From assembly GCF_006345805.1 (NCBI RefSeq), contig NC_042998.1, positions 164,548,001 through 164,612,000 of the forward strand: DNA of 64,000 bases, in the 5' to 3' direction. This stretch comes from Octopus sinensis (Eukaryota). The notes beneath the pieces were generated by a model, which worked only from the letters and a program-made list of their open reading frames with translations, did no database searches and was not told where the DNA came from. Shown here piece by piece: positions 1,595-63,119 of this stretch (position 1 is its first letter; every line of letters begins with the position of its first letter). A program made the translations under genes and the position numbers.

Positions 1595-1817
1595 AATTTT
1601 GGCACAGGGCCTCAAATTTGGTGGGAAGACGAATAGTAGATTACATCGACCCCAGTACTTGACTGGCACTTATTTTATCTACCCCAAAATGATGAAAAGC
1701 AAAGTCGACCTCAGCGGAATTTGAACTTAGAATGTAAAGACTGACCAAATGCGGCTCAGCATTTTGTCTGGCGTGCTAATTATTCTACTAGCTCGCCGTC
1801 TTAAACAACAACAAAAA

Positions 1818-1871
<54 letters not shown>

Positions 1872-3900
1872 TGATGATGATTTCAAATTTTTATTTGCCA
1901 CAAGGGCAGCTTGGGGGAGAGTATTAAGTCGATTACCTTGATCCCAGCGCATAACTGGTAATCATTTAATCGACCCCGAAAGAAAGGAAGGCAAAGTCAA
2001 CCTCGGCGGAACTTGAACTCAGACTGTTAAGACGGGCGAAATACTGTTAAGCATTTCGCCCGGCATGCTAACGATTCTGCCAGCTCGCCGCCTTAAATAA
2101 CAATGATAATAACAACAACAACAACAACAATAATAATAATAATAATAATAATAATAATCCTTTCTTCTATAGGCAAAAGGCCTGGAATTTGTGGGGAGTG
2201 GGCCAGTCAATTACATCGATCCCAGTATTCAACTGGTATTTATTTTATCAACCCAGAAAGGATGAAAGGCCAAGTCGACCTTGGCGAAATGTGAACCCAG
2301 AATGTAAAGACTGACCAAATGCCGCTAAGCATTTTGTCTGGCGCGCTAATGATTCTGCTAGCTCACTGTCTTAAACAACAACAACAGCAACAGCAATGTG
2401 GATGAAACCATCGCATATATCAAGCAACTTACCACACAGCCACTCCTGCTCCTATATTGAGAAATGATTTACCGAACCACGTGGGTTGAAATACGACATA
2501 CATATTCATTACATAAAAGGCGGCGATCTGGTAGAAACGCTTGCACGCTAGGCAAAATGTTTGTGGCGTTTCGTCCGATCTTACGGTCTCTTTTCAAATT
2601 CCGCCATCAATAAATTAAGTACAAGTTGAATACTGGGAACGATGTAATCGATTTACACCCACCCACGAAATTGCTGACCGTGTGCTAAATTTTAAAATCG
2701 GTATATTTGAAAAGATTAAGGCAGCGAGTTGACAAAATCATAGCAAGCCAGGTGAAATGCTTAGCGGCGTTTCGTCTGCTTTCACGTTCTCATTTCAAAT
2801 TCCGCCGACGTCGACTTGGCCTTTCATCCTTTCGGAGTCGATAAAATAAGTACCAGTTGAGCACTTGGGTTGATGTAATCGACTTACGTCCTCTCGCTGG
2901 CGGTGCCTCAGTATGGCTACGGCTTTTGGGTTGAAACGCATAAACGAATGAAAGAATAATTTATTCCTGATTCTCATCGTCCTCTATTCCTTAAGCCAAT
3001 ACCCCTTCCATTTGTAACAGGAGCACCGTTAACGCAAATATTAACGCCAACATTCTTTGACTACGATCACCATCATCAACAACAGCAGAAATTTCCAATA
3101 CCACAGCACATCTATCACCACTATTACTTCTAATAACATCACCACTACCACTATCATCAATCTTAATACTCCCATGCGTATCGCGACTATCATATCAACC
3201 GTGACCACCATACTGATAATACCATCAACATGAAAACTATCAATATTATTATCACAACTACTAAGGTAGCGAGCTGGCAGAATCGTTGGTACGCCAGAAA
3301 AATGCTTAGCGGCATTTCGCCCGTCTTTACGTTCTGAGTTCAATTTCCGCCGAGGTCGGCTTTATCTTTCAGCCTTTCGGGGTTGAGAAAATGGGTATCA
3401 GTCAAGCATTGGAATCGATGTAATCGACTTGTCCCCCTCCCACTAAGATTTCGAGCCTTGTACCTATAGTAGAAAGGAATGTTAATCGTGAAGTGAAGGC
3501 GGCGAGCAGGCAGAATCGTTAGCACACCGGGCGAAATGCTTAGCGGTATTTCGTTTGCCGCTACGAGTCGATAAATTAAGTACCCGTGAAACAATGGGGT
3601 CGATGTAATCGACTATCCCCTTCTCCCACAATTTCAGGTCTTGTGTCTATAGTAAAAAAGGATTATTATTACAACTAGTTGGCAGTGACCTGGCAATATC
3701 TTTTAGCACGCCGGGCAAAACGCTAAGCAGTGTCTGGTACGTCTTAATGTTCTGAGTTCAAATTCCGCCGACTTTACCATTAATCCTTTCGAGGTCTATA
3801 AAATAAGTACCAGTGGAGTGCTGGGGTCGATTTAATTGAATTAACCCCGCCACCTCGAAATTACTGGCTTAGAGTCAAGATTTGAAACCATTATTAATTA
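1595..3900. mobile_element. Cluster of about 8 tRNA-derived SINE copies (group A; three on minus at 1595-2372, five on plus at 2516-3900)
   Basis: Repeated head AAGGCGGCGAGCTGGCAGAATCGTTAGC...GTTCTGAGTTCAAATTCCGCC (A and B boxes) and body GCCTTTCATCCTTTCGGGGTCGATAAAATAAGTACCAG, interspersed with (AAT)n/(AAC)n. The body resembles my recollection of the MetaSINE central domain (unverified). Confidence 0.85.
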
Positions 3901-5329: not shown

Positions 5330-7082
5330 TTTTGATTTTGTTGACTATACAGTATAGCAGGGTCAGTTGGGCAACCTCTGTGAGAAAATCAGCACCATGA
5401 TGCAATTCACTCTACCAGAAACTTAGAAACGACATGCTGTACTGCTTGGCATTTGCACCGGAAGCTCCAATACAAACATTTCAAAGTGTTTGGGCGTCAA
5501 TGTGAGGATAGTGCAGAAGATTCGGAAAGAGTTGGATGAGTCTAATAGTGATTATGAAGGTATGGCAGCTTGGAAAACTCATTCAGATCGTTTTGATAAC
5601 AAAAGAACACCTGAATTTGTTGGTGAGATCCAGGCCATGATTGACAACGATCCTTCCAAGTCAATCAGGTCCATCACCAGGGACACGAGAGTGTCTTAGT
5701 TTCTTACCAAGCAAGTAGTGTATGCAGGCATTCAGTATTCCTCATACAAGGTGAGAAAGGGCTAATTTTTATCCCAAACCCTTAGGACAAGAGAAAAGAG
5801 ACACTACAAAGTTTTTGAACAAACTCAAGCATCCCCTCCAACCGAACACGCTTTGGTTTTTCTCAGACGAGAAAGTTTTCTACCAGGATCAGATGGAGAA
5901 CACACAGAACAACCGTTGGCTTGCCGTGTCCCCAAAACATGTACCGAGAGGGATAAAAATCAAACATCCTGTCAACATCATGGTGTTTAGAGTAATCATT
6001 AGTGATGGCGATGTAATGCTTCTATTCATCTTCCCACACGGCCTCATACTCAACACGGAAGCCTACATCAAGTGCCTGGAGGAGGTAGTGCTACTCTGGG
6101 TCAAGAGAGTGGCTGCTGGAAGACCATATGTCTAGAAACAGGACTCTCCACCATGTCACACAGCAGGAGAACCCAGTCACGGCTGTAAGACAATTTCTGC
6201 GACCACACCACCCCTAACATCTCGCCACCTAACTCCCCAGACTGAACCCCCCTTGATTATTATGTGTGGGGCGCAGTTGAGCGAGAGACCAGCAACACTC
6301 CATGAAACACCGAAGGTGATCTGAAGGCAAGGATTATGGCAGCATTCACCAAGTTAAACAAGTAGACCTTTCAGAAGAAATGCAGGAGATATCGAAGTCG
6401 TCTGGAGGCGGTGGTTGAAACTGAAGGTAATATTGTTGAATAAATATACTTTTTAGTACTGTAAATCCTCGAGTATAGTTCGCCCTTGAGTATAATACGC
6501 AGGGGATTTTTAGGGGGCTGTACCCCTGAAAAACCTAAACCTTGTGTATAATACGTTCCTCTTCTCTAACTTGAGTCGTGCGTAATTAAGCCAGCAGCAC
6601 CTAGTCGAACAAACGCTTCCGCACATGCGTAATACAATAAAGGTGATGTTCTTAACTGTTATATGGCAATGTAAATATGTTTGCAAATTGTTTTTGTTAC
6701 ATGTTATTCTGTGTTCTGAATACTTTTATTTTGATAAATGTTGCTTACTGCAAGTTATGGATGATTCTTTTATGACTTCATTGTTTCAGGCTTAGCTTAA
6801 GGTATTTTCGCACCCGACATCACAAAATGCGTCTGAATAACATTGCCGGACAGCAATAGAGACTCGGACATTGCTTAGAAAATATTTTTCATTTTTAACC
6901 TCGTATATAGTACGCACTAGGGATTTTGACCTTTCAATTTTGGGGGGAAATGCGGATTATACTCGAGGATTTACGGTAGTTCAAGATATTTTAATGTAAT
7001 TTGGGTAAATATATCTGTTAAAATGAGATGTCAGTATTATTTTCATTTTTGCATAATTTAGACAATTTATTCACCGCACCTG
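5330..7082 (+). mobile_element. Degenerate Tc1/mariner transposon, maT/DD37D-like; transposase pseudogene about 5398-6442
   Basis: Translated fragments WFFSDEKVFYQDQMENTQNNRW, IMVFRVIISDG, KQDSPPCH and LDYYVWGAVE match the maT/Bmmar1 pattern. Stops and frameshifts present. Homologous to the copy at 17358-17924. The left TIR is not visible. Confidence 0.8.
6459..6976. mobile_element. 518 bp MITE (Tc1/mariner superfamily, TA TSD) nested in the maT element
   Basis: TIRs CTGTAAATCCTCGAGTATAGTTCGC and reverse complement CCGTAAATCCTCGAGTATAATCCGC (22/25 match). TA at 6457-6458 and 6977-6978. Confidence 0.85.
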
Positions 7083-20943: not shown

Positions 20944-21320
20944 TTACTTGTTTCAGTCATTTGACTGAGTCCATGCTGGATCATCGCCTTTAGTCGAGCA
21001 AATCGACCCCAGGACTTAATCCTTGTAAGCCTAGTACTTATTCTATCGGTCTCTTTTGCCGAACCGCTAAGTTACGGGGACGTAAACACACCAGCATCAG
21101 TTGTCAAGCGATGTTGAGGGTGAGGGGCAAACACAGACACACAAACACATACACACATACATATATACATACATATATACAACGGGCTTCTTTCAGTTTC
21201 CGTCTACCAAATCCACTTACAAGACTTTGGTTGGCCTGAGGCTATAGTAGAAGACACTTGCCCAAGGTGTCACGCAGTGGGATTGAACCCAGAACCATCT
21301 GGTTGGTAAGCAAGCTACTT
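20944..21320 (-). mobile_element. Group B (CORE-like) SINE, body and 3' part; its head continues at 23572-23610
   Basis: Matches the reverse complement of the 48083-48450 copy. Its tRNA head (TGGCTGTGTGGT^AAGTAGCTTGC) is split by the 21321-23571 insertion. Confidence 0.85.
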
Positions 21321-21607
21321 TATTTCATTTAATTTGCCACAAGGGCAGTACACAGATAGTAGCTACGGGCTGGACATAGACATTAATGAATGATGGTGAT
21401 GGAATGAAGATGGTGATGGGAGAAGACGAAAGCGCCCCCGACCCCCGCTTCTCTAAAACAATGTTCTTATTTCAATAAGTTTACAAAATTTTCAAAATTT
21501 CACAAAAATACAAAAATTTCACAAAAATTCCAAATTTTACAAATCACAATTTCAAAAGTTTTTCCAGAGGCAAAAAACCTCCATCACAATATAACACAAA
21601 TACAGGT

Positions 21608-22805
21608 TCACGTTACCCGACCGATGAACGCTCTTGCTTTATTGACGCAATCGTTCGTCGTCAGGCCCCCGCATACAGGTATAATTTGATAGGAATCCTC
21701 CGGGAAAGATTTCACGAACCTGCACCGATCGTCATGGAGTAGGACCTCCGCAGCCAGCTGCGAAGCCACTCGGGATACTCCATGCAGGACCGAAGTCCCT
21801 CCCATTGTTGGTTCTCTTCCTCATTTTACCTATTTCATTTTCTATTGTTCCTCCTTTGTAGAAGAGGACTACATAATATTTCTCCGGCCACACAATCACA
21901 AACGGCGGAGGAGACATTGGAGACGCCGTCTGCGTGTTACAATCCGCTGGCGGCGTTCCGTTTCTCTTCTTTCTTTTTTTCTTTTTACCGTGGGCCACGG
22001 GAGGTTGAGGTTCCGGTGTTGCACACGCCGGATCCACTCTGTCTCCCGTAGCTTCCTGGTCTTTTAGTGGGTCACCATTGTTCCCCACTTTTCGTTCTCG
22101 TTGAGGAAGTCTCCGCTTCCTCGTTCTGTTTCTCTCCCTCTATTGGTGGGGCAGGGAGAGGCTCCGATATCAACTTCTCCAGGATCCTACTTTGGTCCCT
22201 GGGGCATTTCTTCTTAATGTGGCCGGTCTCCGAACACAGGTGACACTTGGGGGCGCGTCCCTCTAGCATCACCGGATACTTGGACCCGGCCATCTTCAGG
22301 AAGTCCGGCAAAACCAGACTCTTGGCCGACTGGGTCCACAGAGTCAAAGTAGCCTTTCCTCCTTCCCAGTTAGCCGCAGGCTGCATTTTCACATTCAGGA
22401 TCTTGGCGCTACCACCGCTCAGACCCCGGCGGATGGAATCTTCCACCCACTCGGGCTCAAAGCCGGGCGGCAGGCCACAGACCCATAAACGTAACAATTT
22501 TTCCCCCTTGTAACTGGGGAGAACAGAATCTCATCGCCCTCAATGGGCTGGCTTGCAAATTTGCAAGCTGCTTCAGCGGAGTCAAATAGCAACCATACCG
22601 TTGCGTATTTGACTCCCCGTTGAATATGTTTAACGGCTGGCATATAGTCTGCCAGCTCGTTCACAATGGTGTCTCTCGGAAAAACCATTATGGTGTCGAG
22701 TGACTTTGAATATGTCCTCAACACCACGGTCTTTTCCTCGAGTTCGTGCAAATATTTTTTGGGAGGTGTTAATTCCCACACAGTGAAATTCTTTGCCTTT
22801 GCCAT
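21608..22805 (-). pseudogene. Frameshifted L1/Tx1-type ORF1 (two RRM-like segments, CX2CX4HX4C knuckle, basic linker, extra C-terminal region; about 400 aa reconstructed)
   Basis: ATG at 22805 (MAKAKNF...). Second frame LRLWVCGLPPGFEPEWV...VMLEGRAPKCHLCSETGHIKKKCP, then GKKKKRKKR and a final frame ending ...NKARAFIGRVT*. Three frame changes near 22500, 22080 and 21820. Confidence 0.75.
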
Positions 22806-22970
22806 AACTTAAAATACAACAGTTCAAAATGATAAACTAAAATTAGCCACAGAAAGGAGAATGAAAAAATGCAACAGAAGGGAAGAAATAAAATTAAAAA
22901 TGGCAGTTCAAAAAAGTTTTTACAAATAAATAATAGACAGAGAAAGAGAGTTCAATTCAAACAAAGGAAT

Positions 22971-23002
<32 letters not shown>

Positions 23003-23141
23003 CCACTTCTTCGGCCAAAAATTGTAATCCAGGCCAAATGCACTGTTGGTAAAACCCTTGGTAAATAATCCTTGGTAATCCGTGGACAACACAACGACAA
23101 TTTCAACAATAATTTTTTCAGACGGACTATGCCGCTTCAAA

Positions 23142-23536
23142 AATACAATTTCTTTTCACTCGACACAGGCAGAAAAATTATATCTGGAGCAAAGTGGAGC
23201 CTTATTATTTGCTAAAAAATATTAAATGCTAAAAAACATTCATGCAAGTAATAAAACTTCACTAAACTCGCAAAAATAAAAACGCCTACCCGTAGTCGAT
23301 TCGAACGTTCAACAATTCACGTTGAAATAACGCGACATCAATACAATTTTCTTTCCACTCGACACAGGCAGAAAAATTATATCCGGAGCAAAGTGGAGCC
23401 TTATATCTGCTAAAAATATTAAATGCTAAAAAACATTCATGCAAGTAATAAAACTTCACTTCGCTCACAAAAATACAAAATTCCTACCTTTAGTCGAGTC
23501 GAAAGTTCAACAATTCACGTTGAAACAACGTTCATC
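23142..23536 (-). repeat. Two tandem ~198 bp monomers in the 5' UTR of the ORF1-only element
   Basis: AATACAATT(T)TCTTT.CACTCGACACAGGCAGAAAAATTATATC.GGAGCAAAGTGGAGCC starts at 23142 and 23340, and the similarity runs the full unit. Confidence 0.9.
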
Positions 23537-23692
23537 TGGAGCAGCAAAAAAACACGTCCGAACAGTTCAGAGGTTAGCGAGCTACTTACCACACAGCCAC
23601 TCCTGCGCCGTTAATTTTTCCTAGTGTATCATGCTTATTAATTAAAGTCGAAACGCCAAAACTGTCTTTGCTTCCCAGCACTGAGAAGTCTT

Positions 23693-24040: not shown

Positions 24041-24399
24041 AGCACTGAGAAGTCTTGCTACGTCGCTGGATCGAAGGCTTTTTATACGAACTGCAACCAT
24101 TTCCTTTTCTTTTTTTACACGCTTTAATTCTTAGTAGACTACCCAATATGTCGTTCCATTATTAAACACGGTAAGGAGACCAGCTGGCAGACACTTCAAC
24201 ACGTAGAACAAAATACTTAGCAGAAATTCCTCCGACTCTATACGTTCTGGGTCCAAATCTCACCCAGGCCAACTTTGCCTTTCATCCTTTCGAGGTGGAT
24301 AAAACAAAGTACAGGTAAAATAATGGAGTTGATGTAATCGACTAAAGCCCCCTTCCCCAACATTCTGTTGAAATTCGAAACCATTATTAAACACTGTAC

Positions 24400-24996
24400 A
24401 GGCGGCGAACTGGCAGAATCGTTAACACGCTAGATGAAATGCTTAGCGGTATTTCACCCGTCGTTACGTTCTGAGTTCAAATTCCGCCGAGGTCGACTTT
24501 ACCTTTCATCCTTTCGGGGTCGATTAAATAAGTACCAGTTACGCGCTGGGGTCGATATAATCGACTTAATCTGTCTGTCTGTCCTTGTTTGTCCTCTCTG
24601 TGTTTAGCCCCTTGTGGGTAGTAAAGAAATAGGTATTTCACCCGTCGCTACGTTCTTTGTTCAAATTTCACCGAGGTCGACTTTGCCGTTCATCTTTTCA
24701 GGATCGATAAATTAAGTACCAGTTACGCACTGGGGTCGATGTAATCGACTTAATACCTATGTCTGTCCTTGTTTGTCCCCTCTATGTTTAGCCCCTTGTG
24801 GGTAATAAAGAAATAGGTATTTCACCCGTCGCTACGTTCTGAGTTCAAATTCCACCGAGGTCGACTTTGCCGTTCATCTTTTCAGGATCGATAAATTAAG
24901 TACCAGTGGAATACTGTGGTCGATGTAATCGACTATCACCCTCCTCCAAATTTCAGGCCTTGTGCCTATAGTAAAAAGGATTATTAAACACTGTAC
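24400..24996 (+). mobile_element. Tandem trimer of group A SINE (one head, three bodies, period about 184 bp)
   Basis: GGTATTTCACCCGTCG at about 24448, 24632 and 24817. Flanking direct repeat ATTATTAAACACTGTAC (24383-24399, 24980-24996). Confidence 0.85.
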
Positions 24997-37597: not shown

Positions 37598-39729
37598 TAT
37601 AATATATATTTACTGGTATATAAATTCAGGTGCATGTACTCACACAAGATATATACAACCATAGATGTACGTACATTCAATAAAATTATTGTAATTATCT
37701 ACATTAACTCTATTTGCTGCCAGCGTTTGTGTAAATTCTGTGGATGGCGAACCCCAGGTTAAAGTTAGCGCGGTGAAGTTTCTATTCTTATGTTCTATTT
37801 ACCAAAACAATTGGTTTTCTGTGTGCTCACATAGATGTTAAAAGCGAATTATTGTTGTTGGGCTTGCTTGTTATGATTTGAGCCGAAATGTCAGAACAGC
37901 TTCAGTTCATGTGGGATTCAAATTAGAAACTTCTGACAATAACTTGGAGGAGTAATTTGTATTACATTCAGTATACGATACCGCGTCAAAAGCGTTGCTC
38001 TACAGGAACCGTTAAACGCTCTTGAAGTCTTCGTAATAGAGAACTGATTTCAAATTTTGGCACTAGGCCAGAAAGTTTGGATGAGGAATAAGTCGATTGT
38101 ATTGGCCCTAGTGCTCAACTGATATTTATTTTATCAAATCCAAAAGGATGAAATGCAAAGACAACCTCGGCCGAATTTCCTTTCGTAATAGAATATTGAA
38201 TAAATAAATAAGGAGTTTATACGTGCTAAAAAAAAATGGTTATATGTATTGTGTACTAATACTGTCTTAATATATCACCAACAATTGCAGAAGGCCCCCA
38301 TGAGGGTACATTACACTGAATCCCGAAGGATGAAATGCAAAGTTGATTTCCAAATGTTTTAAACTGAAAACGTAAACTATCTTTACAAAATCTTGCAGTG
38401 TATTTTATCCGATTCTCAACCGATTTTGCAAACTTACCACCTTATTGTCTTAATCAAATTTAAAATCATTGATGAAGTCTTTTTTTCACAGTGGAGCCTA
38501 TAACAATTGCATCTTATCACAAATAAACAACTTAAAAGAAACATAATGCATTAGTTATATGAATGACATATATACAGATAAGTTTACTCGTTACACTAAA
38601 TCTAGCGGGATAAAATTATAAAACTACAAATAATTTCCTTTCATGCACATCAACACATCCAGCCCCCCTCACACACACACACCATATGTACATCTGTTTA
38701 TAAAGAAATTATTGTGTTGTGTTTTTATCGTAGAACGCTCTCCAACAAAACAGTTTGCATTAGCCTACTTAGTATGAAAACAAGCACTTGCTCCACAGAC
38801 CTAGAAATTACGGCTCCATAGAAAACAAATGAGGCTTAAAACTAATAAGGGTACCTCTACGATGTAAACATGTTAGAAATAGTAAGCAAATATCCCTCAA
38901 ATAACACCCTTGCTGTCTTATAAATGAAAGGGCACATTGGATAATGAGGTCATTATATATTGTGATTGAAAGAAAAAAGACGATATGGGCAAGACTGTAA
39001 AACCTTTCATTATAGGTTTACTTGCCTAAGGCTGATACGAGGTGAAACACAAACAGTAAGTGGATATTAAAACTACAGATGTAATGAAGAATCTAAGCAT
39101 TTCAGAGGGACTTAGGATAAAAATAAATATGCCCGAATTTTACGTTAGAAAAAATATATTAAAAATACTTTATCTTATTGTTATATTTCGGAAAGGTCAT
39201 CTTTTTCTCCAAATAAACACATGCACTATATTACTCGTTCTTCACTACAGCTTTATTATTATTCTTATTTTAGAGTCCTTTGTCTGAAGTCTTTCGCCAC
39301 ACACCCCGTGACCTCTTCAGCGACTCTCCATCCTACGTGTCTCCTTCTGTCTGGTTTAGTCCATTGTGTCTTTCTGTGGTGTGTCAAAGACAAAAAAATG
39401 GCCATCCTGAAATATAACAATATCTGTTTCAACACACGATTTAACATCAGGAATCTTGCAAAAAATACATTTGTTTGTTTTAATTTGATAGAATTTAGTG
39501 TGGTTTTCGATTATTGAATTATCTGCAATCATTATGAATTGATTAACCGTTGGGTGAGGTGGGGTGGGGATTAGAGGTGGATTTGGTAGTGGAGATGGCA
39601 GAAATGGTAAAGCACCAGGCTAAATGGTTTGCTGTATTTGCTCCAGCATTTTATGTTTTGGATTCAAAACCGATCGGGTTTGATTTTGCATTTCGGGGTC
39701 GATTACATAAATACTTATCAAGTACCGGG

Positions 39730-40185: not shown

Positions 40186-40285
40186 NNNNNNNNNNNNNNN
40201 NNNNNNNNNNNNNNNNNNNNNNNNNNNNNNNNNNNNNNNNNNNNNNNNNNNNNNNNNNNNNNNNNNNNNNNNNNNNNNNNNNNNN
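40186..40285. other. Assembly gap (100 N)
   Basis: Run of N. Confidence 1.
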
Positions 40286-41354: not shown

Positions 41355-41890
41355 AAGGCAACGAGCTGGCAGAATCGTTTGCATGCCGGACAAACTGTTT
41401 AGTGGCATTTCGTCCGTCGTTATGTTCTGAGTTCAAATTCCGCCAAGGTCGACTTTACCTTTCATCCTCTAAGGGTCGCTAAAATGAGTACAAGTTGAAC
41501 ACTGGAGTCGATGTAATTGACTTAGCCCCTCTCCCGAAAATTTCTGGTCCTGTGTCCAAATTGGAAATCAATATTATTACACCTCACCCCTAAATGGCGA
41601 GTTAGCAGAAACGTTCGTGGGAAAGACAGCTGTCCAAAATACAGATTAATAGAAAAAAATGTAAAATACATTAATCTTTTTTACTGATTCTTTGCTTATA
41701 AATACGCTTAGCATTTTGTCAGTCTTTACGTTGTGAGCTCAAATTTCACTAACGTCGAGTGTTTGCCTTTCATACTTTCGAGGTCGACAAAATAAGTATT
41801 ATTGAAGTAATTGGGTCGATGTAATCGACTACTCACTACCTTCACTAAAAAAAAAAAGAACTGCTGGCAATGTGCCAAAATTTGAGACCA
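41355..41890 (+). mobile_element. Two group A SINE copies; the second carries a ~97 bp foreign insert in its head
   Basis: Group A consensus at 41355-41575 and 41592-41890. 41613-41709 matches 42664-42762. Confidence 0.8.
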
Positions 41891-42051: not shown

Positions 42052-43150
42052 AGACCGCTCCAAATATTAAGCTTTACTATCCAAGTACATCTCTTCATAT
42101 TTTTCATTCAAAGATAGGAACTTTTCTTCAGACGTAGGGAAAAAAAATCAGCCCTTAACTACAAAACCTCAATGCTTACAAGTTAAACATACAAACGTCC
42201 TAAACTGTATCCAGTGAAAGCCCACTAGTTGGTCACTCAGACATACTGCAGTCTGACAAACTGACGCCCAGATATACTGGCTCACCCTCCTCCGCTAGTT
42301 TATTTGTCTTTACACCGCTCCTGGAATTTAGATGGTCTTGTACTACATCCATTCACGCTCCCCCTTCTAAGTTCAATTCGTTCTCCTCGGAAGTCGGCCT
42401 GCTGGAGTTCAATTCCTGATGTCTTTATTCAGAGTTTGATCGCAACAATTTAACCAGAGCGCCAACGGTATCAAATCTCACCAGTGTCCGTTGTGAGATC
42501 TGCGAAGTACATGAACAGTTTCAAGCACTTATGGAACTAATAATTTTTTTTAAATTGTGAGGGAGACAACCCTGTGTTTTTAATCAAAATTTCCAGGTTC
42601 CCTACATTAAGTATATCAGCACCGGCCTTTAAACGTCGCTTTCTTTCCATAAACACTGGCTCTGTTCGTGGGAAAGACAGCCGTCCAAAATACAGATCAA
42701 TAGAAAAAAAAACGTAAAATACATGAATCTTTTATACTGATTCTTAGTTTATAAATACGCTTTGTTCTAGTTCAATATTAAGTAAGCTTCGGGGAACCTG
42801 AGGAAAATGTTGGTTACAACTCCTCATAAGTCTAACGTCCACATGAAGGTTATGTCATTAATATGTATTTTTCCCCGCCAATTGTTTAGTATTTGAGTAT
42901 TCATTTCTATCTAATCATTGCATGTTTTATACATGGCGTTACATAGAATTTCACATAGGTGTATAGGTGTGATAGGTGATAGGTGTAAAAAAAAAAAAAT
43001 ATTAATAAAAACTTGGGCGATCGATTTGCCAGGAACTCATAGATCCTTTACCCTTTTGAAAAGATACAATAGATAATCTAAAGATATGTATGAAAATACG
43101 GGAATGCCAGAGCTGGAATACATACAATCACAGGTCATCTCATTCAAAAG

Positions 43151-43747
43151 AATGGAAGTAATACCACCAGCAGAAACAAGAAAAGGGGAGCGAATCAGAT
43201 GGCGAAAGGGAAGCAGCCGGAAAGAAAAGAAGGAAAAAGCCAAGCAAAACAGATACAGAAGCCCACCCTCCCCCTACAGACGCTGAACCTACCCACCCAC
43301 CTCTGACATACAAAAAATTGCATACAGACAAGCTCTCAAATTTCCCCACCTCTGGACAAAAAATTATGCACTAAAAGTACGAGAATTCAAACAGAAAACT
43401 ATGCGAAGAGATTAAAACACGGAAAGATATCAGAGCAGTTGAAACAAATATGATGATATTCAAGGATGGCATTGCGATCTCTTATTGAACGAAGAACACA
43501 AGGGGAAAAACAAATCTACAAAATTTGGGAAGTGGACTTGAACATTTTTGGTAATTGACGTACGTACAGTTGTTGGAGGAGTACAAGTTCGAAGTATAAA
43601 ATGTGACTAAAAGGTGAAGCGACTCAGAGGTGGGGGGCTGAGGAACTTCATTCCATTATCACTCATCTTGTAACATGTGTTTTTTTTTTAACTTTGTTCT
43701 ATGTCTCCACATATCCTTGAATTGTCCCCTTGTGGACAATAAAGAAG
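43151..43747 (+). mobile_element. Probable 5'-truncated non-LTR retroelement 3' end
   Basis: Ends in hairpin ATTGTCC-CCTTGT-GGACAAT plus AAAGAA. Possible 10-bp TSD CATTCAAAAG (43141-43150, 43748-43757). Decayed Lys/Pro-rich coding-like interior. Confidence 0.5.
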
Positions 43748-45862: not shown

Positions 45863-46204
<342 letters not shown>

Positions 46205-46533: not shown

Positions 46534-46969
46534 TTGTTTGTTCCTTCTCGAGCCATGCCTGGCTCATAAGAGACAGTTTCATTGGTGTATAGGTTTCCCA
46601 CCTGGACAGGATGCCGGTCTGTCGCAGGTGAGATGCAAGATGCAGGGGGAAAGAGTGAGAGAAAGAGTCGGCAGGAGTTTGCCATTACCTTCTGCCGGAG
46701 CCACGTAAAACTTATGTGTTTCGCTTATAAACACACACATCACCCGGTCTTTACTACCCACAAGGGGCTAAACACAGTGGGGACAAACAAGGACAGACAA
46801 AGGGATTAAGTCGATTACATCGACCCCAGTGCGTAACTTAATTTATCGACCCCGAAAGGATGAAAGGCAAAGTCGATCTCGGCGGAATTTGAACTCAGAA
46901 CGCCGGGCGAAATACGGCTATGCATTTCGCCCGGTGTGCTAACGATTCTGCCAGCTCGCCACCTTTCCA
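46534..46969 (-). mobile_element. Chimeric SINE: complete group A copy fused to a headless group C body
   Basis: 14-bp direct repeat CATTCTAATGTATA (46520-46533, 46970-46983) flanks both parts. Confidence 0.7.
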
Positions 46970-47514: not shown

Positions 47515-47890
47515 TCCGAGGTCAACTTTGCCTTTCATCCTTTCGGGGCCGATAAATTATGTACAAGTTTGGTACTGGGGTCGATCTAATCGACCTGCCC
47601 TCTCCCCCAAAATTTCGGGCCTTGTGCTTAGAATATTTATTAGAATAAATAAAGATTATTTATTAACTGCTCAAGGCGACGAACCGGCAGAATCGTTAGC
47701 ACGCTGGGCGAAACGCTTTGCGGTATTTCGTTTGCCGCTACATTCTGAGTTCAAATTCCGCCGAGGCCGATTTTGCCTTTCATCCTTTTGGGGTCGATTA
47801 TATAAGTGCCAGTTACGCACTGCGCTCAATTTAATCGGCTTACCCCCTACCCCAAGATGCCCTTGTGGCAAGAATTTGAAATCATTATTT
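47515..47890 (+). mobile_element. Two group A SINE copies
   Basis: Group A consensus. The second copy ends TGCCCTTGTGGCA (47858-47870). Confidence 0.8.
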
Positions 47891-49039: not shown

Positions 49040-49816
49040 AGTATAGCTAAGACTACATAGTCTAATGCGTCATTCCGTTTTTCATGACTGTCAGGTGTGA
49101 CTTGAGAAAGCTTTCTATGATAGTTCCAGCAGGCAGAGACCAACAGAAGCAATCGTTTTTGGCTCGATACCTTTTTTGTGGATATTTGCAGCTTATGTTC
49201 ACCGAAACGCCTTCGACCAGAATTGAAACCTTACCACAATCTAGCATCACTATTTGCTTTTATTACTACTTTTTGCAAATGTGAAATGAAGGTGTGACAG
49301 AGTTACACGTAGAGATCAGTCACAGACTGTTTAAGTTATATAATGTTTAGAGTTCAACACTGCTAGAGAGCAGAATTTATTTTTCATTCATCCAAATTCG
49401 ACAAAACAAGTACCAGGATTGTACTGGATTCTTCGGAATCGAATTATACCATTTGCCACCAAAATGTTTCGTCCTGTCCTAGTACCTATAATCAATATTT
49501 TTTATGTAAAAAAACATGAAGCCTGAAACCTGTTGAGCAGTAAAAGACTACATGTGCTTTATAATGTAACCGCTTAAATTTATTAGATATTGGTTTTAAA
49601 TTTTGACTCTAAGCCAACAATATCGGGATAGACGATTACATTGATCCCAGTGCTCAACTGGTACTATTTTATTGATTCCGAGAAGAGGAAAAGCAAAGTC
49701 GACCTCAGTGGACTTTGAACTCAGAACGTAAAGACGGACGAAATGCAGCTAAGCATTTTGCCCGGCGTGCTAACGATTCTGCCAGCTCACCGCATAATTT
49801 AATAAATATTAATACC

Positions 49817-50051
49817 AATTTTTTTACTACTCACAAGGGGCTAAACACAGAGAGGAAAAACAAGGACAGACAAACGGATTAAGTCGATTACATCGACCCC
49901 AGTGTGTAACTGGTACTTAATTTATCGACCCCGAAAGGATGACAGGCAAAGTCGACCTCGTCGGAATTTGAACTCAGAACGTAGCGGCAGGCGAAATACA
50001 GCTACACATTTCGCCCGGCGTGCTAACGTTTCTGCCAGCTCGCCGCCTTCT
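49817..50051 (-). mobile_element. Group A SINE with tail B
   Basis: 14-bp TSD TAAATATTAATACC (49803-49816, 50052-50065). A second group A copy lies at about 49600-49795. Confidence 0.9.
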
Positions 50052-51670
50052 TAAATATTAATACCTATTGAGGACTAGTTACAAAATTATTTCATTTTAA
50101 ACAGGAGCTACTTTTAAAATCTTCCAGTCACCGAGTAGGTAATGAACGGAATGTTATTCCACGTTACTCATGTCTCCTCAGTTGAACATGAATTGTGTCT
50201 ACCGTAGAAAGGAACGGACAGACCATTAGCCTAAATCTTGAAAATGATTGATGTCATCGTCCCTTGATGCTACGGTACCTTACGGAATAACGATGTGATC
50301 CGAACGGATTCAGTACAAACATAAGTAATAATTTTCTGTATTACAGACACAAGGCATAAAAGTTTATGGGAGGAGGCTAGTCGGTTACATCAACCTCAGT
50401 GCTCGACTCGTACTTATTTCATTGACTCCGAAAGGGTGAAAGACAAAGTCGGCCTTGGCGGAATAATATAATAAAACAAGCGAAAAAACAAGTTTACATA
50501 CATAAGGAAAAAAATTATAAGCTTCATTGATAAATTGTTGGGAAGAAAGAGAAAGAAGACAACACCGAAACCCAATTTAATCTAAGATTGAATTGCGATA
50601 TGTTTCAATCTTATTAGATCTCAACAGGGCAACATTGATACTTGTATTTGTCAGGTACTACGTGACTTAGAGATTATAAAGATTTTAAATAGAGCTCAGT
50701 TAGTCTTACACCCTAGTTAATGCGAAATGTAGTTAATTAGCATTAGAATATTTAATGCAGAAAACATACTATCTTGAGGTTTGCATACGGCCAAATCAAA
50801 TTTCAACGACTCACAAGGCATGTTAGACTCTCGTTTGAGGAGAACTTGAATTCCTTGTTGAAACAACACTTTATACCGTGTGTCACTTCGAGTGAAAATG
50901 TGATTTGCTGAACAGGTGAACGTTTGCGTTTTGACGTGACAGCACAATGAAATGTCAAGTATTTGCAGGAACTTTGCATACATTTTCTGAGCTGTTGTTG
51001 TCGTTTTCAGTCGTGGTGGCGATGGTGATGGTAGTGGTAGCAATGGTAGTTGTGTTAGTAGTAATGCTACTGTAATTGTTGTGTTGTTTTATTTAGTTTT
51101 AAGCATATTTGATTTTTATTTTATTTTTGTTTCATTATCGTTTCGTACATTTTCCTATGTGAAAGCAAACCTAGATTTCACTTGTCAGTGCGATCTTTTG
51201 TAAGAAAGTGGCATCTAACTTCATAGTTTGAGACAGATTTTAGCTGTTATTTCTAGCAGGTCGAGTAGCCATGCTAAGGTTCCCTCTTTGGCTGGTTTCA
51301 ATCTATGGGAAAATAGTGGCTTCAAGTTTTGGCACGAGACCAGCAAATGCTTGAAGTGGGATGGAACAAATCAATGACATCGACAGCCTGTTCTCGACTG
51401 GTATTTATCTTATCGACCCCAAAAGGATGAAAGACGAAGTCTGCTTCACTGGAAGAAATGCCTCTAAACATTTTGTCCGGTACCGTGACGATTCTGCCGA
51501 CTCACCGCCCTAATCTATATGAAAAATAATGCTTTCATGCGTGTTTTTGTATGTATTTGTTATATATGTACCACTTACTACTAAGTCGATAGAATTATCA
51601 TACTGATTTCAAATTTTATCACAAGGCCTGCAGTTTTGGGGAAGGTGACTAATCGATTACATCGACCCCA

Positions 51671-51904
51671 GAGGGCGGTGAGCTGGCAGAATCGTTAGCA
51701 GGCCGGGCGAAATGCGTAGCCGTATTTCGTCTGCCGTTACGTTCTGGGTTCAAATTCCGCCGAGGTCGACTTTGCCTTTCATCCTTTCGAGGTCGATAAA
51801 TTAAGTACCAGTTACGCACTGGGGTCGATGTAATCGACTTAATCCCTTTGTCTGTCCTTGTTTCTTCCCTCTATGTTTAGCCCTTTGTGGGTAGTAAAGA
51901 AATA
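51671..51904 (+). mobile_element. Group A SINE (tail B) inserted into an oppositely oriented group A copy
   Basis: 12-bp TSD TACATCGACCCC (51658-51669, 51905-51916). Host halves at about 51605-51670 and 51905-52020. Confidence 0.85.
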
Positions 51905-54900
51905 TACATCGACCCCTGTGTTCAACTGGCACTTGTTTTATCTACCTGGAAAGGATGAAAGGCAAAGTCGGCCTCAGCGGAATTTGAACTCGGAGCGTAA
52001 ACACGGACGAAATGCCGCTTTCATAAATCATTTTCTGAGATGTGTGTGTGTGTGTATTCGAATATTTTATAATAAAAACATAATAACAAATATAGACAAA
52101 TAAAGAAAAGAAAATCTAGTTTAGCCCCATCTTTATCAACAACAGTTCGTCCTCCACCACAGGTTAACAAGCGATGGTGAATTGTTAATGTCATCTTAAC
52201 TTAGCGGTTTGGTAAAAGAAACCGATCGAATAAGTAATGAGCTTCATATAATTACTGGGCCGATTTCTTCGATTAAATCTATATGGCGATGCAACAACAT
52301 GGCCGCAGTCCAATAACAGAAACGAGTAAAAGAACACACACACACACACACACATAGATATGCATGTATTACTTTTTATTCCCATATTTTATGAAAACTT
52401 AATATTCGTAGAAGAGGATTTTCACAAAAGGCAGTATCATATAACAAAAGATGTATATTAGATTTATACAGATATATAATCACTCCACATCACTCGTTGC
52501 ATTAAGATAATATTTACATATAACTTAGAGGTGTTACCAAACAACTATCACCGCCCACAAGAGCATTGTTTGAAATCTTTCATCAGAAGACCGAGCTACC
52601 AGAGAAGTGGATTGATCTCCCCTACCCTACCTCTCCCCGCTCCTTCTCTTAAATCCTTTTTTATTCTCTACTATGTTGAGCATTTTCCAGTTGTTTGCTT
52701 AGTATCTTAATAGTGCGAAATTCTTCACTGTCGTAGAGGACGGAATAAAGATTTCTATTAGTTTACTTTCACTTGGAATTCCTAAAATGCTGACTGAGTC
52801 ATAAAATACAATTGTAGCTCAAACGCACTTCACATAATGGCATCCTGTAAAAATGTTATTTTTATGTATCCGAATTCTTAAGAAGTTCTCTCTGTCTACA
52901 TAAATCATTTTCTGAAGTGAGTTATATCTATTCCCGCTGATAAACAATAGCATTGACAAGTCATTTTTTCTCTCTCTCTCTATTGCTTGCTGTTGTTGAT
53001 AAAGATGGTGCTAAACTAGATTTTCTTTTCTTTATTTGTCTATATTTGTTATTATGTTTTTATTATAAATTGTACACAATGTTATTTCGAGGAGGATCTC
53101 CGGAATAGCAAAATGTTCTTACATTCCTTAATTCTAACAATAAAATTTTGTTTTTCCTTTTTATAGCTCCCCAGTTTCATAATTTCTGTCCAACGATTAA
53201 TTTGTTATTTATATTGTCCGTTTAAGTAATTTGTATAACGGTGATGAACTAAAACAATATCTATCGCTGAAAACTCAGAGAAACTTTAAGAAAAGAATAT
53301 TAGAAATATATTTTCTAAGAACATTGAAGTAAATTACAGAACGAGTAGTTAAACATATGCTTCTGGGTTCAGTTCCCCTATGGAGCGTGTTTGGTGTCTA
53401 CTACCAGAGTCTGAAGTCAACCTAAGCCTTGTACTTAGGTAGTAAATACAACTTATCATTTAGTTTAGCTCCAACATCTAGCAGCTCAGACGTCGGCTCG
53501 TAAATAATGGTTCACTCAATAACTCCGTAATGAAGGTTGTCGATTTTCATGACTTAATTTCTGGAACTCCAATACAGGAAAGGAAGAGAGGAAGGAACTG
53601 GAAACCTGCTCCAGTGGACTCTGCAAAAAGTATCCCATTATTTGGTGGAGGTGTTAAAACGGGCTTGGATTAAGTTTACCCCTCAAGAGCAGGCAGAGTC
53701 CAACTAATAGTCCTCTACTTGGTTTCCGTTCAACTCAATCTCACTCACAAATGTTTGAGTTTAGCCGATATGGTAGAAAACACTTACTCATGATTGCATC
53801 ACACTGGGATCGAACGTGGAACTACACGAGTGCGAAGCGACCTTCTTAATGACATCACAATGTCTGTGCCCTTGTTAGCTAGAAAGTGAAGTTGAAAGGA
53901 ACAATGAACTTCAGCATCCAAAAAAACGTACCAACTTTATGCTGTAACTCTAAATACTTAGTATGGCGTATTCGCATGTCTTAAAATTACAAGGAGAAGA
54001 AAACGAAGAAAATGAAGTAAACGAAGAATTATAAGAAGAAGAACGGAACTATGCATACTTTGACGCACACACACCTAATAAACAGTGTTCCTTACAAGAT
54101 ATTTCTTATCTAACTTGAAACACATCTCTCATTTCTCTTATCGAAGTTTCCTCTCTTTCTCTCTCTCTCTGTTTATCCGTTTTTACCCCTCCTTCAGTAT
54201 ATCTCTATTTCTCTGTTTCTCTTTCTGACACTCCCACCAAGTCCCGCCTTTCTACACTCCTCCACCCCTGTTCTTATTTCCATCTGGTTCCGTAAGTGCT
54301 TGGCCGCAGCTGAAGATGGCCAGGAGATGGAGAGTTGGTGAGTTTGAGAGAGAGAGATAGAGAAGGGAGGGAAGGAGGGAGAGAGAGGAGAACTAACAGG
54401 CGCCAAATGTGTAATCAAGCATAACACAGATGTAGAAACGTACAGATATACACTAAAATAACATAAATTCCTATAGTTTGCTATCATTTCTAGTTATCCC
54501 CTCTCACTCACCCAACAACCGCGTTTAAACACCCTCCCCCTATGTCATCACCAGCTTTTAAAATTTATTTTGAAAACAAAAAATCGTGTTTCTCTCTTAT
54601 TTTCTCCTTTGCACCAGAATAAAGTTTAAAAGGGCAAATTTAGCACGTTTAACCCTTGACAATATATCACTCTCTATTTATCTGTCTCCATCCCTCTCAC
54701 CCAATATCTATCTATCTAAATACAAACACGCACATACACATAAACACACACACACACACACACCACACACACACACACACACATACATAAACTCTCGGTA
54801 ATAAAACAAATACGTACTCCACAGGATACATCAAAATTAGTCATTGCAAGGTATTTTTCGCCTAAATTTCTCCCCAAATAGTCACACACACATACAGGCA

Positions 54901-62305: not shown

Positions 62306-63119
62306 AATGGTATACGATAAAAGTGTGTCTATTGTGCACGTGTGGTGATATGTTTTGTTGGACGGACGTCAAACTCCGATACTATAATAAAAGTGAAATG
62401 AAATCCAATCGCTATGCGAGTTACAGCAGCATGAACATCTCAAAGCACAACAATATCTGTTTTAATAGTTGATGTCACATCAAAAACCTCGAAAAACAAA
62501 CGCAAAAAAAACGAAATTCTAAAGCTGAACGCTACAATAGCCTTCGTTGTTCTCAAGCGCCAGGTGAAACTTGATCAAATAGACCAATGATCAAAGTAAT
62601 TTCAACTGTGCCCCATCGCCATAATTTAGAATTATATACGATTGAATTATTTAAGGTGGATTAAATTTATTCCTAAAAGGTTGAGCAATCACATACAGGC
62701 TCTTCTTTGGTTTGTAGAACTAGATACTTACTCATATCGGCAATTGTTCCTATGTTTTCGGGGCCTTGTGCTTAAGATGCTGCACTCACAATCGTGAGAT
62801 CGTAGGTTTGATTCCCTGATCAGCTTTACATTGTGTTCTTGAGCAAAACAGTTCATTTCTCGTAACGCCACTTCACTCAGCTGCTGGGCAACTTTGCGAT
62901 GGAATGGCGTACAACGGTAAGATGGTTACCCAGGAAAATAACACAAACGGAGGTCTCACGACGTACGTTTTGTATTCAGCAATCGAAATGATGAATAGTA
63001 CAACCCGTAATATGAATCCCGACTTCTTGGGATAGGTTGTTCAACCACATCGAAGGTCAACAATAACGTCCGTTAGGTTTCATATATTTTTTATTAATAA
63101 CGTTTAACTAAATTAACTT

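What the first reader, a model, noticed from the sequence alone, without database searches (positions are those of the whole stretch)
21332..21348. Shared 3' hairpin with a CTTGT loop and compensatory stems across unrelated retroelements
Seen, just before the A-rich 3' ends: TGCC-CTTGT-GGCA in the ORF1-only element (21332-21348, minus; 17 bp identical to the SINE end at 1893-1909, and also at 47858-47870); AGGC-CTTGT-GCCT in SINE tail A (24955-24967); GCCC-CTTGT-GGGT in SINE tail B (about 24607-24619, 24791-24803); ATTGTCC-CCTTGT-GGACAAT at 43721-43740. TGCC/GGCA versus AGGC/GCCT differ by two fully compensated pairs. Established: stringent LINE RTs recognise a 3' stem-loop that SINEs copy (e.g. 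eel UnaL2/UnaSINE1). Inference: one RT recognition signal serves several SINE subfamilies and ORF1-only elements. TSDs of 12-16 bp around several of them fit a common machinery.
Basis: partly seen in the sequence, partly recalled or inferred. Interest (0 to 1): 0.7.

Follow-up and report, generated by a model that had tools for sequence, protein, structure and literature searches.

The report
Octopus retroposon shared 3' tail hairpin
A four-base-pair RNA hairpin about a dozen bases before the end of an abundant octopus SINE and of small ORF1-only retroposons is real and is kept by compensating mutations; it is most likely the handle by which a still unidentified LINE reverse transcriptase copies them, which is a known kind of signal found in a new host.

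Summary
The window is Octopus sinensis chromosome CM016860.1. It is far commoner than chance, and all the excess lies in two element classes.

- **Elements carrying it.** One class is the 3' tails of a single tRNA-headed SINE ("SINE-1", about 25 copies, tail types A, B, C, D, F). The other is the 3' ends of ORF1-only non-LTR retroposons of 1.6-2.3 kb.
- **Position.** The hairpin lies 11-14 nt before the true 3' terminus. That terminus was fixed by TSDs of 8-18 bp and by an empty site in O. bimaculoides.
- **Covariation.** Stems differ between tail types by double, compensated changes: 89% of cells pair against 61.5% in shuffles. One O. bimaculoides ORF1-only element has both arms exchanged between conserved flanks. 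Old copies decay.
- **Homology.** The tails are homologous over up to about 60 nt, so this is one shared tail module, not convergence between unrelated elements.
- **Correction.** The 7-bp stem at 43721 results from a deletion specific to O. sinensis.
- **Gap.** No RT-encoding LINE carrying the module could be reached with the tools, so RT recognition remains an inference.

Verdict: a real, selected 3' stem-loop. It is a new member of the known SINE/LINE shared-tail kind, and the ORF1-only partner family is the more interesting part.

The parts
21335..21347 (-). Hairpin TGCC-CTTGT-GGCA (type C stem) of the ORF1-only retroposon. It lies 14 nt before the element's 3' terminus.
21321..23579 (-). 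ORF1-only non-LTR retroposon, 2259 bp. It comprises a 5' UTR with a ~205-bp tandem repeat, a frameshifted ORF1, a ~750-nt 3' region, the hairpin, and the end ...AAATTAAATGAAATA. It is inserted in a CORE-type SINE.
   Evidence: Flanked by an 8-bp TSD. No RT ORF.
23580..23587 (-). 5' copy of the target-site duplication AAGTAGCT of the ORF1-only element.
   Evidence: read
21313..21320 (-). 3' copy of the target-site duplication AAGTAGCT.
22075..22805 (-). ORF1 coding region with a CCHC zinc knuckle and a frameshift near 22500. It is 62% identical to O. sinensis LOC115225585.
1896..1908 (-). SINE-1 tail type C hairpin TGCC-CTTGT-GGCA, followed by AAATAAAAATTTGAAATC(ATC)n(ATT)n.
47858..47870 (+). 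SINE-1 tail type C hairpin. The element ends 13 nt downstream, with 8-bp TSD ATTATTTA. The copy is present in all three octopus species.
24955..24967 (+). SINE-1 tail type A hairpin AGGC-CTTGT-GCCT, followed by ATAGTAAAAAGG(ATT)n.
3636..3648 (+). SINE-1 tail type A hairpin with two G.U pairs (AGGT-CTTGT-GTCT).
47617..47629 (+). SINE-1 type A-like hairpin GGGC-CTTGT-GCTT.
24607..24619 (+). SINE-1 tail type B hairpin GCCC-CTTGT-GGGT, first unit of a tandem B-B-A array.
24791..24803 (+). SINE-1 tail type B hairpin, second unit of the array.
46751..46965 (-). Complete young type-B SINE-1 copy, hairpin at 46756-46768. It is absent at the orthologous site of O. bimaculoides. In O. vulgaris it is flanked by the 18-bp TSD TATACATTAGAATGTGGA and ends ...GGGTAGTAAAGAAATA.
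49829..49841 (-). Type B hairpin with one post-insertion mismatch (GCCC-CTTGT-GAGT). TSD of 14 bp, GGTATTAATATTTA.
51880..51892 (+). Type B hairpin with a mutated loop (TTTGT). TSD of 14 bp starts 12 nt after the stem.
38058..38070 (-). Type D hairpin TGGC-CTAGT-GCCA, followed by AAATTTGAAATCA. This is the best covariance-model hit.
41545..41557 (+). Older type D hairpin (TGGT-CCTGT-GTCC). TSD of 14 bp starts 11 nt after the stem.
41865..41877 (+). Type D hairpin TGGC-AATGT-GCCA: stem intact, loop changed.
51617..51629 (-). Decayed type D hairpin (AGGC-CTTGT-GATA). Its O. bimaculoides orthologue reads TGGT-CTTGT-GTTA.
3865..3877 (+). Type F hairpin TGGC-TTAGA-GTCA: stem kept, loop UUAGA. The same variant occurs at 49604-49616(-).
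43725..43737 (+). Remnant 3' tail ('E') of an old ORF1-only-type element, with about 60 nt homologous to the SINE-B tail. The long stem seen here was created by a deletion specific to O. sinensis.

Best explanation
**What it is.** The motif is the stem-loop of a 3' tail module of about 60-70 nt. The module consists of:
- a pyrimidine-rich stretch (...TGTCTGTCCTTGT..GTCCCCTC...);
- a 4-bp G+C-rich stem closing a CUUGU loop;
- an A-rich spacer of 11-14 nt that ends in GAAAU(A/C) at the RNA 3' terminus. In types A and C this is followed by (AUU)n or (AUC)n.

**Who carries it.** The subfamilies of one abundant octopus SINE carry it, and so does a family of ORF1-only non-LTR retroposons of 1.6-2.3 kb. 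Neither encodes a reverse transcriptase.

**How it most likely works.** It is a cis-acting signal that a stringent-type LINE reverse transcriptase recognises, and that positions the RNA 3' end for target-primed reverse transcription. SINE-1 and the ORF1-only elements would then be mobilised in trans.

**Shown.**
- The structure is under selection in the source copies.
- Its distance from the 3' end is fixed.
- It is shared between the two element classes.
- Both classes have inserted recently, with TSDs.

**Inferred.**
- That the binding partner is an RT.
- Which LINE supplies it. RTE is the leading candidate on circumstantial grounds.
For: **Enrichment.** The excess over chance is confined to these two element classes.

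**Covariation on 25 aligned tails.**
- 89% of cells pair against 61.5% in shuffles (0 of 500 reach it).
- Covariation score is 0.71 against 0.25.
- Slid registers give 22-52% paired.
- 3 of 4 pairs change on both sides.

**Stem variants.** Subfamily stems are AGGC/GCCU, GCCC/GGGU, UGCC/GGCA and UGGC/GCCA. The O. bimaculoides-specific ORF1-only element (L002 13076-14715, 15-bp TSD) has GGGU/GCCC, with the arms exchanged. Its flanks are otherwise nearly identical to the SINE-B tail.

**Decay after insertion.** Old copies and orthologous copies accumulate uncompensated changes, as expected if selection acts only on source copies.

**Fixed spacing.** The 3' terminus lies 11-14 nt after the stem in types B, C, D and the ORF1-only elements. 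It was fixed by TSDs and by an empty site.

**Specificity.** Covariance-model hits with E<0.05 fall only on these tails in 125 kb.

**Precedent.**
- Individual stringent-type zebrafish LINE ORF2 proteins recognise their own 3' tails (PMC4176376, abstract only, listed).
- Compensated stem-loops are shared by mollusc SINEs and CR1 or L2 LINEs (PMC4824008).

**Candidate partner.**
- RTE-BovB is the expanded and active LINE of octopuses (PMC8967140; PMC9115989).
- RTE 3' ends carry AT-rich simple repeats including (ATT)n (PMC2887409).
Against: - No RT-encoding element with this tail was found, so the key link is missing.
- The stem is only 4 bp. Folding energies of the tails are not better than shuffles (z from -0.2 to -1.9).
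- The loop is not invariant. UUAGA occurs in two copies, CAUAGU in the O. bimaculoides element, and AAUGT in one copy.
- Copies within a subfamily are not independent, so the number of independent compensated events is small, about 5-7.
- The register of decayed copies was chosen partly by a pairing score. Ungapped flank homology does support that register.
Confidence: 0.6

Rival explanations
1. The hairpin is the binding or packaging site of the RRM-like + CCHC protein that the ORF1-only elements encode. SINE-1 parasitises that protein. The RT comes from a separate ORF2-only LINE such as RTE. This would be a two-component (split) retrotransposition system.
For: - The ORF1-only elements are discrete, TSD-flanked and recently mobile, with no room for an RT.
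- Their protein family has 47 clusters. The 10 looked up by name include seven from octopods (O. sinensis, O. vulgaris, O. bimaculoides, Argonauta hians). Family members carry a nucleocapsid-type zinc knuckle.
- The octopus RTE has a single ORF and no ORF1 (PMC9115989).
Against: - There are no binding data.
- Many ORF1 copies are broken: the window copy is frameshifted and the L002 copy has stops.
- Known stringent systems place 3' tail recognition in ORF2p (PMC4176376, abstract).
- No RTE 3' end could be compared.
Confidence: 0.15
2. Several related LINE lineages are involved rather than one RT. Each stem variant (A, B, C, D, H) matches the tail of its own partner lineage, and each SINE tail type records a successive tail capture.
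For: - There are five discrete stems, each with its own flanks and terminal sequences.
- Type B copies are absent from the orthologous O. bimaculoides sites, while the A, C and D copies compared there are shared by all three species.
- SINE superfamilies of bivalves use multiple LINE partners (PMC11481361).
Against: Compensated stems with a common loop and common spacing would also be tolerated by a single RT that reads shape rather than sequence. No partner is known for any type.
Confidence: 0.3
3. The hairpin acts in 3'-end formation or RNA stability, for example as a protective terminal structure beside AAUAAA-like sequences, and not in RT recruitment.
For: A-rich sequences resembling AAUAAA follow the stem in several types: GGCAAATAAA, GGGTAATAAAG, GGACAATAAAG.
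Against: - AAUAAA is not conserved. Type B is mostly AGUAAAG and type A is AUAGUAAAAAGG.
- The elements end 11-14 nt after the stem without a poly(A) tail.
- SINEs are normally Pol III transcripts (general knowledge).
Confidence: 0.08
4. The palindrome has no function. It is simply inherited with a shared tail, and the apparent compensation is chance plus relatedness.
For: The stem is short, the energy z-scores are weak, and related sequences inflate shuffle tests (tool caveat).
Against: - Every difference between the subfamily stems is compensated.
- The arms are exchanged outright between flanks that are otherwise nearly identical.
- Slid registers fail.
- Uncompensated changes appear only in old or orthologous, post-insertion copies.
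Confidence: 0.07

Closest known systems
Stringent-type LINE/SINE pairs of the L2 clade (eel UnaL2/UnaSINE1, zebrafish ZfL2)
   Same: - A stem-loop close to the 3' end is shared between a SINE and its partner.
- The 3' end is not poly(A) and has a short terminal motif or repeat.
- Recognition is by the LINE's own ORF2 protein (PMC4176376 abstract; the rest is my own knowledge).
   Different: - Here the stem is only 4 bp and the loop is CUUGU. The UnaL2 loop is GGAUA as I recall it, on a longer stem.
- The terminal motif is GAAAU(A/C), sometimes with (AUU)n.
- The RT-encoding partner is unknown.
- The element sharing the tail encodes only an ORF1-like protein.
CR1- and L2-derived 3' tails of bivalve SINEs with compensatory stem changes (Nishihara et al. 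2016, PMC4824008), and multi-partner SINEs of bivalves (PMC11481361)
   Same: - A mollusc SINE with one conserved body carries exchangeable LINE-type tails.
- Conserved stem-loops show compensated changes.
- Tandem SINE multimers occur.
   Different: - Those tails were matched to identified CR1, CR1-Zenon, L2 or Nimb LINEs. Here no such match could be made.
- This tail module and its octopus hosts did not appear in the papers I could read.
HAL1 (half-L1), the ORF1-only derivatives of mammalian L1
   Same: Non-autonomous non-LTR retroposons that keep an ORF1 and lack ORF2, and are presumably mobilised in trans (own knowledge).
   Different: - HAL1 uses the relaxed poly(A) route of L1 and its L1 parent is known.
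- The octopus elements have a structured, non-poly(A) tail that they share with a SINE, and no known parent.
RTE-clade LINEs (octopus RTE-2_OV and RTE-2_OB, BovB) and the SINEs they mobilise
   Same: - Tails of types A and C run into (ATT)n or (ATC)n, as RTE 3' ends do (PMC2887409).
- RTE is the active, expanded LINE of octopuses (PMC9115989, PMC8967140).
   Different: - RTE has a single ORF with no RRM/CCHC ORF1.
- Type B and the ORF1-only tails end without a simple repeat.
- No RTE 3' end could be examined, so RTE is only a candidate partner.

Membership tests
SINE/LINE pair with a shared, stringently recognised 3' tail | 3' tail homology between the SINE and a longer non-LTR element | tested here: met
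   - A 17-nt identity, plus a similar terminal motif, links the SINE-C tail and the ORF1-only element.
- About 60 nt of homology link the SINE-B tail with the E and H ORF1-only tails.
- The longer element is not autonomous.
SINE/LINE pair with a shared, stringently recognised 3' tail | Conserved stem-loop near the 3' end, supported by covariation | tested here: met
   - 89% of cells pair against 61.5% in shuffles.
- 3 of 4 pairs have double changes.
- Slid registers give 22-52%.
- Arms are exchanged in the L002 element.
SINE/LINE pair with a shared, stringently recognised 3' tail | An autonomous LINE (EN + RT) carrying the same tail | tested here: inconclusive
   - No RT ORF was found in the window or in L001, L002 or L004.
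- Octopus genomes could not be searched by DNA.
- Metagenome scans were empty.
SINE/LINE pair with a shared, stringently recognised 3' tail | The RT binds the tail, and mobilisation depends on stem and loop | not testable with these tools
   Needs retrotransposition and binding assays.
SINE/LINE pair with a shared, stringently recognised 3' tail | Target-site duplications and a non-poly(A) terminus | tested here: met
   - TSDs of 8, 14, 14, 14, 15 and 18 bp were found.
- Termini read ...AAAGAAATA...TTTGAAATC and ...ATGAAATA.
tRNA-derived SINE (reported octopus classes tRNA-Deu and tRNA-Core) | tRNA-like head with A and B boxes | tested here: inconclusive
   - A B-box-like GAGTTCAAATTCC and a conserved head are visible.
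- ARAGORN and Rfam call nothing.
- Assignment to the Deu class rests on my recollection and on PMC8967140.
LINE ORF1p of the RRM + CCHC type | CCHC zinc knuckle | tested here: met
   - Pfam zf-CCHC is above its cut-off in relatives P0003, P0017 and P0036 (21-24 bits). It is below cut-off in the window copy (17.7 against 20.8).
- The family profile hits nucleocapsid knuckles in the PDB.
LINE ORF1p of the RRM + CCHC type | RRM fold upstream of the knuckle | tested here: inconclusive
   - There is no Pfam RRM hit.
- The AlphaFold model has pLDDT 37 and shows only a beta-alpha-beta-like secondary-structure pattern.
LINE ORF1p of the RRM + CCHC type | An ORF2 (EN/RT) downstream in the same element | tested here: not met
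   Both TSD-delimited elements (2259 bp in the window, 1640 bp in L002) leave 0.75-0.9 kb or less after ORF1 and contain no RT.
HAL1-like ORF1-only derivatives | Descent from an autonomous LINE that encodes a homologous ORF1 | not tested
   None of the 47 homologue clusters is longer than 802 aa, and none of the eight scanned has an RT domain. Their genomic contexts could not be fetched.

The most novel reading that the evidence does not exclude
The ORF1-only retroposons are not decayed LINEs. They are one half of a split retrotransposition system. In this reading an octopod-specific family of ORF1-only elements and the ORF2-only RTE LINEs cooperate in trans through a common 3' tail module, and the hugely expanded octopus SINE parasitises the same module. 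The hairpin would be the shared address label of a three-party system.
Probability: 0.12. Interest if true: 0.8.

Novelty: new member of a known kind. Interest (0 to 1): 0.45.

Why it matters
SINEs make up a very large share of octopus repeats, about 40% of the TE complement according to PMC8967140. Their expansion has been linked to cephalopod genome evolution, yet I found no paper that identifies the partner LINE of these SINEs or their recognition signal.

A defined tail module gives a concrete search key for the machinery behind that expansion. The module is a hairpin, a 12-nt spacer and a GAAAU end.

It also brings to light a family of ORF1-only retroposons that is recently mobile and shares the SINE's tail. 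That offers a natural system for asking which LINE protein, ORF1p or ORF2p, reads a 3' tail.

Tried and rejected
1. **Protein route to the partner LINE.**
   - The ORF1 query found a single homologue, P0001 in O. sinensis. Its locus L001 shares only the coding region and has no hairpin.
   - A full HMMER search gave 47 clusters. The 10 looked up by name include seven from octopods, and none of the eight scanned carries an RT domain.
   - Two profile searches returned only P0001 and P0031, so the relatives' loci could not be fetched.
   - Look-ups of the window's 128-aa ORF and of P0031 found nothing on record.
2. **DNA scans.** JGI metagenome scans for the SINE-B tail and for the SINE body found nothing.
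3. **Databases.** Rfam and ARAGORN on the window found nothing.
4. **Transcriptome supplement of PMC9115989.**
   - Exact-motif searches failed, probably because of line wrapping.
   - One transcript, comp2533_c0_seq1, carries a related tail. The tail lies antisense to what I read by eye as a Dong/R4-like endonuclease fragment, so it says nothing about the partner.
5. **Structure.** The ORF1 prediction has pLDDT 37, so no fold search was run.
6. **Rejected ideas.**
   - The 43721 element is not an independent long-stem variant. It is a deletion artefact.
   - The copy at 24358-24370 (CAAC-ATTCT-GTTG) is not clean covariation. It can equally be a deletion of the inner hairpin that brings the outer CAAA/UUUG arms of type D together.
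   - The sites at 62761 and 42333 are not members. The covariance model does not hit them.
   - The CORE-type SINE ('OK'-like, for example 20960-21320) ends ...GAAACAAGTAAAAGAG without the hairpin.

Full report
**Source and material.**
- The window is eukaryotic: 31-41% G+C, with no tRNA or Rfam hits.
- A divergent histone H4 gene at 45863-46174(-) gave exact protein matches in three assemblies.
- Locus L003 (Octopus sinensis GCA_006345805.1, chromosome CM016860.1) is 100% identical to window 35863-56174.
- L004 (O. vulgaris) is the orthologue at 94-99% identity. L002 (O. bimaculoides) is the orthologue at 85-94%.
- Together with L001, these loci gave about 60 kb of extra octopus DNA and a three-species comparison.

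- TGCCCTTGTGGCA occurs three times against 0 expected.
- 13 of 144 CTTGT pentamers have flanking stems of at least 4 bp, against a 2.2% background for all pentamers.
- Nine of the 13 lie in the tails described below. The other four equal the chance expectation.
- Among 4-bp-stem pentaloop hairpins with at least 3 G:C pairs, CTTGT is the commonest loop in the window, with 7 of 58.
- The site at 62761 lies in the tRNA-like head of a different SINE.
- The site at 42333 lies in a non-repeat context conserved in all three species.
- A covariance model of the tails hits neither site.

**What carries the hairpin: SINE-1.**
- A self-comparison shows about 25 copies of one SINE of roughly 230 bp. It has the head GGCGGCGAGCTGGCAGAATCG... 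and the body ...GGGGTCGATAAATTAAGTACC...GGGGTCGATGTAATCGAC.
- The same body carries different tails:

| Type | Stem-loop-stem | Sequence after the stem |
|---|---|---|
| A | AGGC-CTTGT-GCCT | ATAGTAAAAAGG(ATT)n |
| B | GCCC-CTTGT-GGGT | AGTAAAGAAATA |
| C | TGCC-CTTGT-GGCA | AA(T/G)AA..TTTGAAATC(ATC/ATT)n |
| D | TGGC-CTTGT-GCCA | AAATTTGAAAT(C) |
| F | TGGC-TTAGA-GTCA | two copies |

- The second SINE of the window is CORE-type and ends without the hairpin.

**What carries the hairpin: ORF1-only retroposons.**
- The window element spans 21321-23579(-), 2259 bp. It is inserted in a CORE-type SINE and flanked by the 8-bp TSD AAGTAGCT.
- It has a 5' UTR with a ~205-bp tandem repeat and a frameshifted ORF1 with a CCHC knuckle. 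It has about 750 nt of 3' region and no RT.
- Its protein family has 47 clusters in 1.8 billion representatives. The 10 looked up by name include O. sinensis, O. vulgaris, O. bimaculoides and Argonauta hians.
- None of the clusters exceeds 802 aa, and none of the eight scanned has an RT domain.
- A second, independent element lies at L002 13076-14715(-). It is a 1.64-kb ORF1-family element with the 15-bp TSD AACCTACCCACCCAC, present only in O. bimaculoides. The family has therefore been mobile since the species split.

**The tails are homologous.**
- The SINE-B tail, the E tail and the L002 tail ('H') align over about 60 nt: TGTCTGTCCTTGT..GTCCCCTC...hairpin...A.TAAAGAAATA.
- The window ORF1-only element shares TTAATGTCTATGTC..., the 17-nt block CTGCCCTTGTGGCAAAT and a ...TGAAATA end with the SINE tails.
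O. vulgaris and O. bimaculoides read ...GTTGGCCC-CT(T/A)GT-GGA(C/A)AATAAAG.
- O. sinensis lost about 14 nt, which by accident placed ATTGTCC next to the loop.

**Evidence that the structure is selected.**
- On an ungapped alignment of 25 tails, 89% of cells form pairs against 61.5% in shuffles (0 of 500). The covariation score is 0.71 against 0.25.
- Slid registers give 22-52% paired, and 3 of 4 pairs change on both sides.
- At the subfamily level, every difference between stems A, B, C and D is compensated.
- The H tail has GGGT-CATAGT-GCCC where SINE-B has GCCC-CTTGT-GGGT. The arms are exchanged while the flanks stay nearly identical.
- Uncompensated changes occur in old copies. They also occur between orthologous copies: AGGC/GATA in O. 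sinensis against TGGT/GTTA in O. bimaculoides. That is what neutral decay after insertion predicts.
- Caveats:
  - Copies within a type are not independent.
  - The stem is short.
  - Folding energies are not distinguishable from shuffles.

**Position relative to the 3' end.**
- The young B copy at 46751-46965 is absent in O. bimaculoides. In O. vulgaris it ends ...GGGTAGTAAAGAAATA, directly followed by the 18-bp TSD.
- Other TSDs (8, 14, 14, 14 and 15 bp) place the terminus 11-14 nt after the stem in types B, C, D and the ORF1-only elements.
- The terminus always follows a GAAAU(A/C)-like motif. Types A and C then run into (ATT)n or (ATC)n.

**Ages.**
- The type B copies compared across species are shared with O. 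vulgaris but missing at the orthologous O. bimaculoides sites.
- The A, C, D and E copies compared are shared by all three species.

**Mechanism.**
- The anatomy matches that of stringent-type LINE tails and the SINEs that copy them: a selected stem-loop at a fixed short distance from a non-poly(A) end, shared by two non-autonomous element classes that insert with TSDs.
- Precedents are the zebrafish L2 elements (PMC4176376, abstract) and the CR1/L2 tails of bivalve SINEs with compensated stems (PMC4824008). Multi-partner SINEs are described in PMC11481361.
- I therefore take RT recruitment and positioning for target-primed reverse transcription as the most likely function (0.6).
- The partner is not identified. 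RTE is the leading candidate for two reasons.
  - It is the expanded and active LINE of octopuses.
  - RTE tails carry AT-rich simple repeats including (ATT)n.
- Against RTE as a parent, it lacks an ORF1, so the ORF1-only elements could not be its deletion derivatives.
- That leaves open a more unusual reading, in which ORF1-only and ORF2-only elements cooperate through a common tail, or in which the hairpin is read by the ORF1 protein.

**Novelty.**
- Shared SINE/LINE 3' stem-loops with compensatory changes are well known, including in molluscs.
- This module, its octopus hosts and the ORF1-only family that shares it did not appear in the papers I could search.
- I rate it a new member of a known kind, of moderate interest. 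The ORF1-only family is the part most worth following up.

Noticed in passing
window 45863-46174 (-): An intact, divergent histone H4 gene. It reads ENII, HARRK, MDIV and YSLK where I recall the canonical H4 as ENVI, HAKRK, MDVV and YALK. The protein is identical and annotated in O. sinensis, O. vulgaris and O. bimaculoides. No other histone gene lies in the window.
   Followed up: partly
window 24400-24985 (+): Head-to-tail array of three SINE-1 units with tails B, B and A. The second and third units are 5'-truncated and joined at ...AAATAGG|TATTTC. This resembles the SINE multimers reported in bivalves (PMC11481361).
   Followed up: partly
L002 13076-14715 (-), O. bimaculoides: Species-specific insertion of a 1.64-kb ORF1-only retroposon with the 15-bp TSD AACCTACCCACCCAC. 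It sits inside an older element of the same kind. Its ORF1 already carries stops.
   Followed up: yes
window 23150-23470 (-): The 5' UTR of the ORF1-only element contains two copies of a ~205-bp unit (GGCTCCACTTTGCTCC.GATATAATTTTTCTGCCTGTGTCGAGTG...). This is reminiscent of the monomer repeats of LINE promoters.
   Followed up: no
window 46750 versus L004 9382-9447: O. sinensis has lost about 65 bp that O. vulgaris retains. The lost stretch holds the last bases of the SINE-B tail, its 3' TSD copy and the head of the neighbouring SINE.
   Followed up: partly
window 42333-42345 (+); L002 15703-15715; L004 13868-13880: TGGT-CTTGT-ACTA hairpin in a non-SINE context, conserved in all three species and not followed by an A-rich end. 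It is consistent with chance, but its surroundings were not identified.
   Followed up: no
window 62757-62830 (+): tRNA-like head of a third SINE type (GGGGCCTTGTGCTTAAGATGCTGCACTCACAATCGTGAGATCGTAGGTTTGATTCCC). It happens to contain the bare motif GGGC-CTTGT-GCTT.
   Followed up: partly
window 1800-1880 and 2100-2150: Long (ATT)n, (ATC)n and (GTT)n microsatellites start exactly at the ends of SINE-1 type C and type A tails. The SINE tails seem to seed these microsatellites.
   Followed up: no
window 51748-51991: A type-B SINE-1 copy is immediately followed by an inverted partial copy of itself, forming a palindrome. The B copy inserted into the body of another SINE-1 (TSD TACATCGACCCC.G).
   Followed up: partly
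window 59348-60167 (-) and 5427-6132 (+): Remnants of mariner/Mos1-type transposase. At 59348-60167, Pfam HTH_48 scores above its cut-off and DDE_3 scores below it. The 5427-6132 ORFs look mariner-like by eye but have no Pfam hit.
   Followed up: partly
window 40186-40285: Assembly gap of 100 N.
   Followed up: no
O. vulgaris transcript comp2533_c0_seq1 (supplement of PMC9115989): One end of this transcript is the antisense of a related tail (...GTCCCCTCATCCTTCATCCTTGTGGCAAATAAATGAAATCA). On the other strand it lies next to a decayed fragment that I read by eye as a Dong/R4-like restriction-type endonuclease (motif NRPDI). Members of the tail family are therefore present in brain transcripts.
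   Followed up: partly
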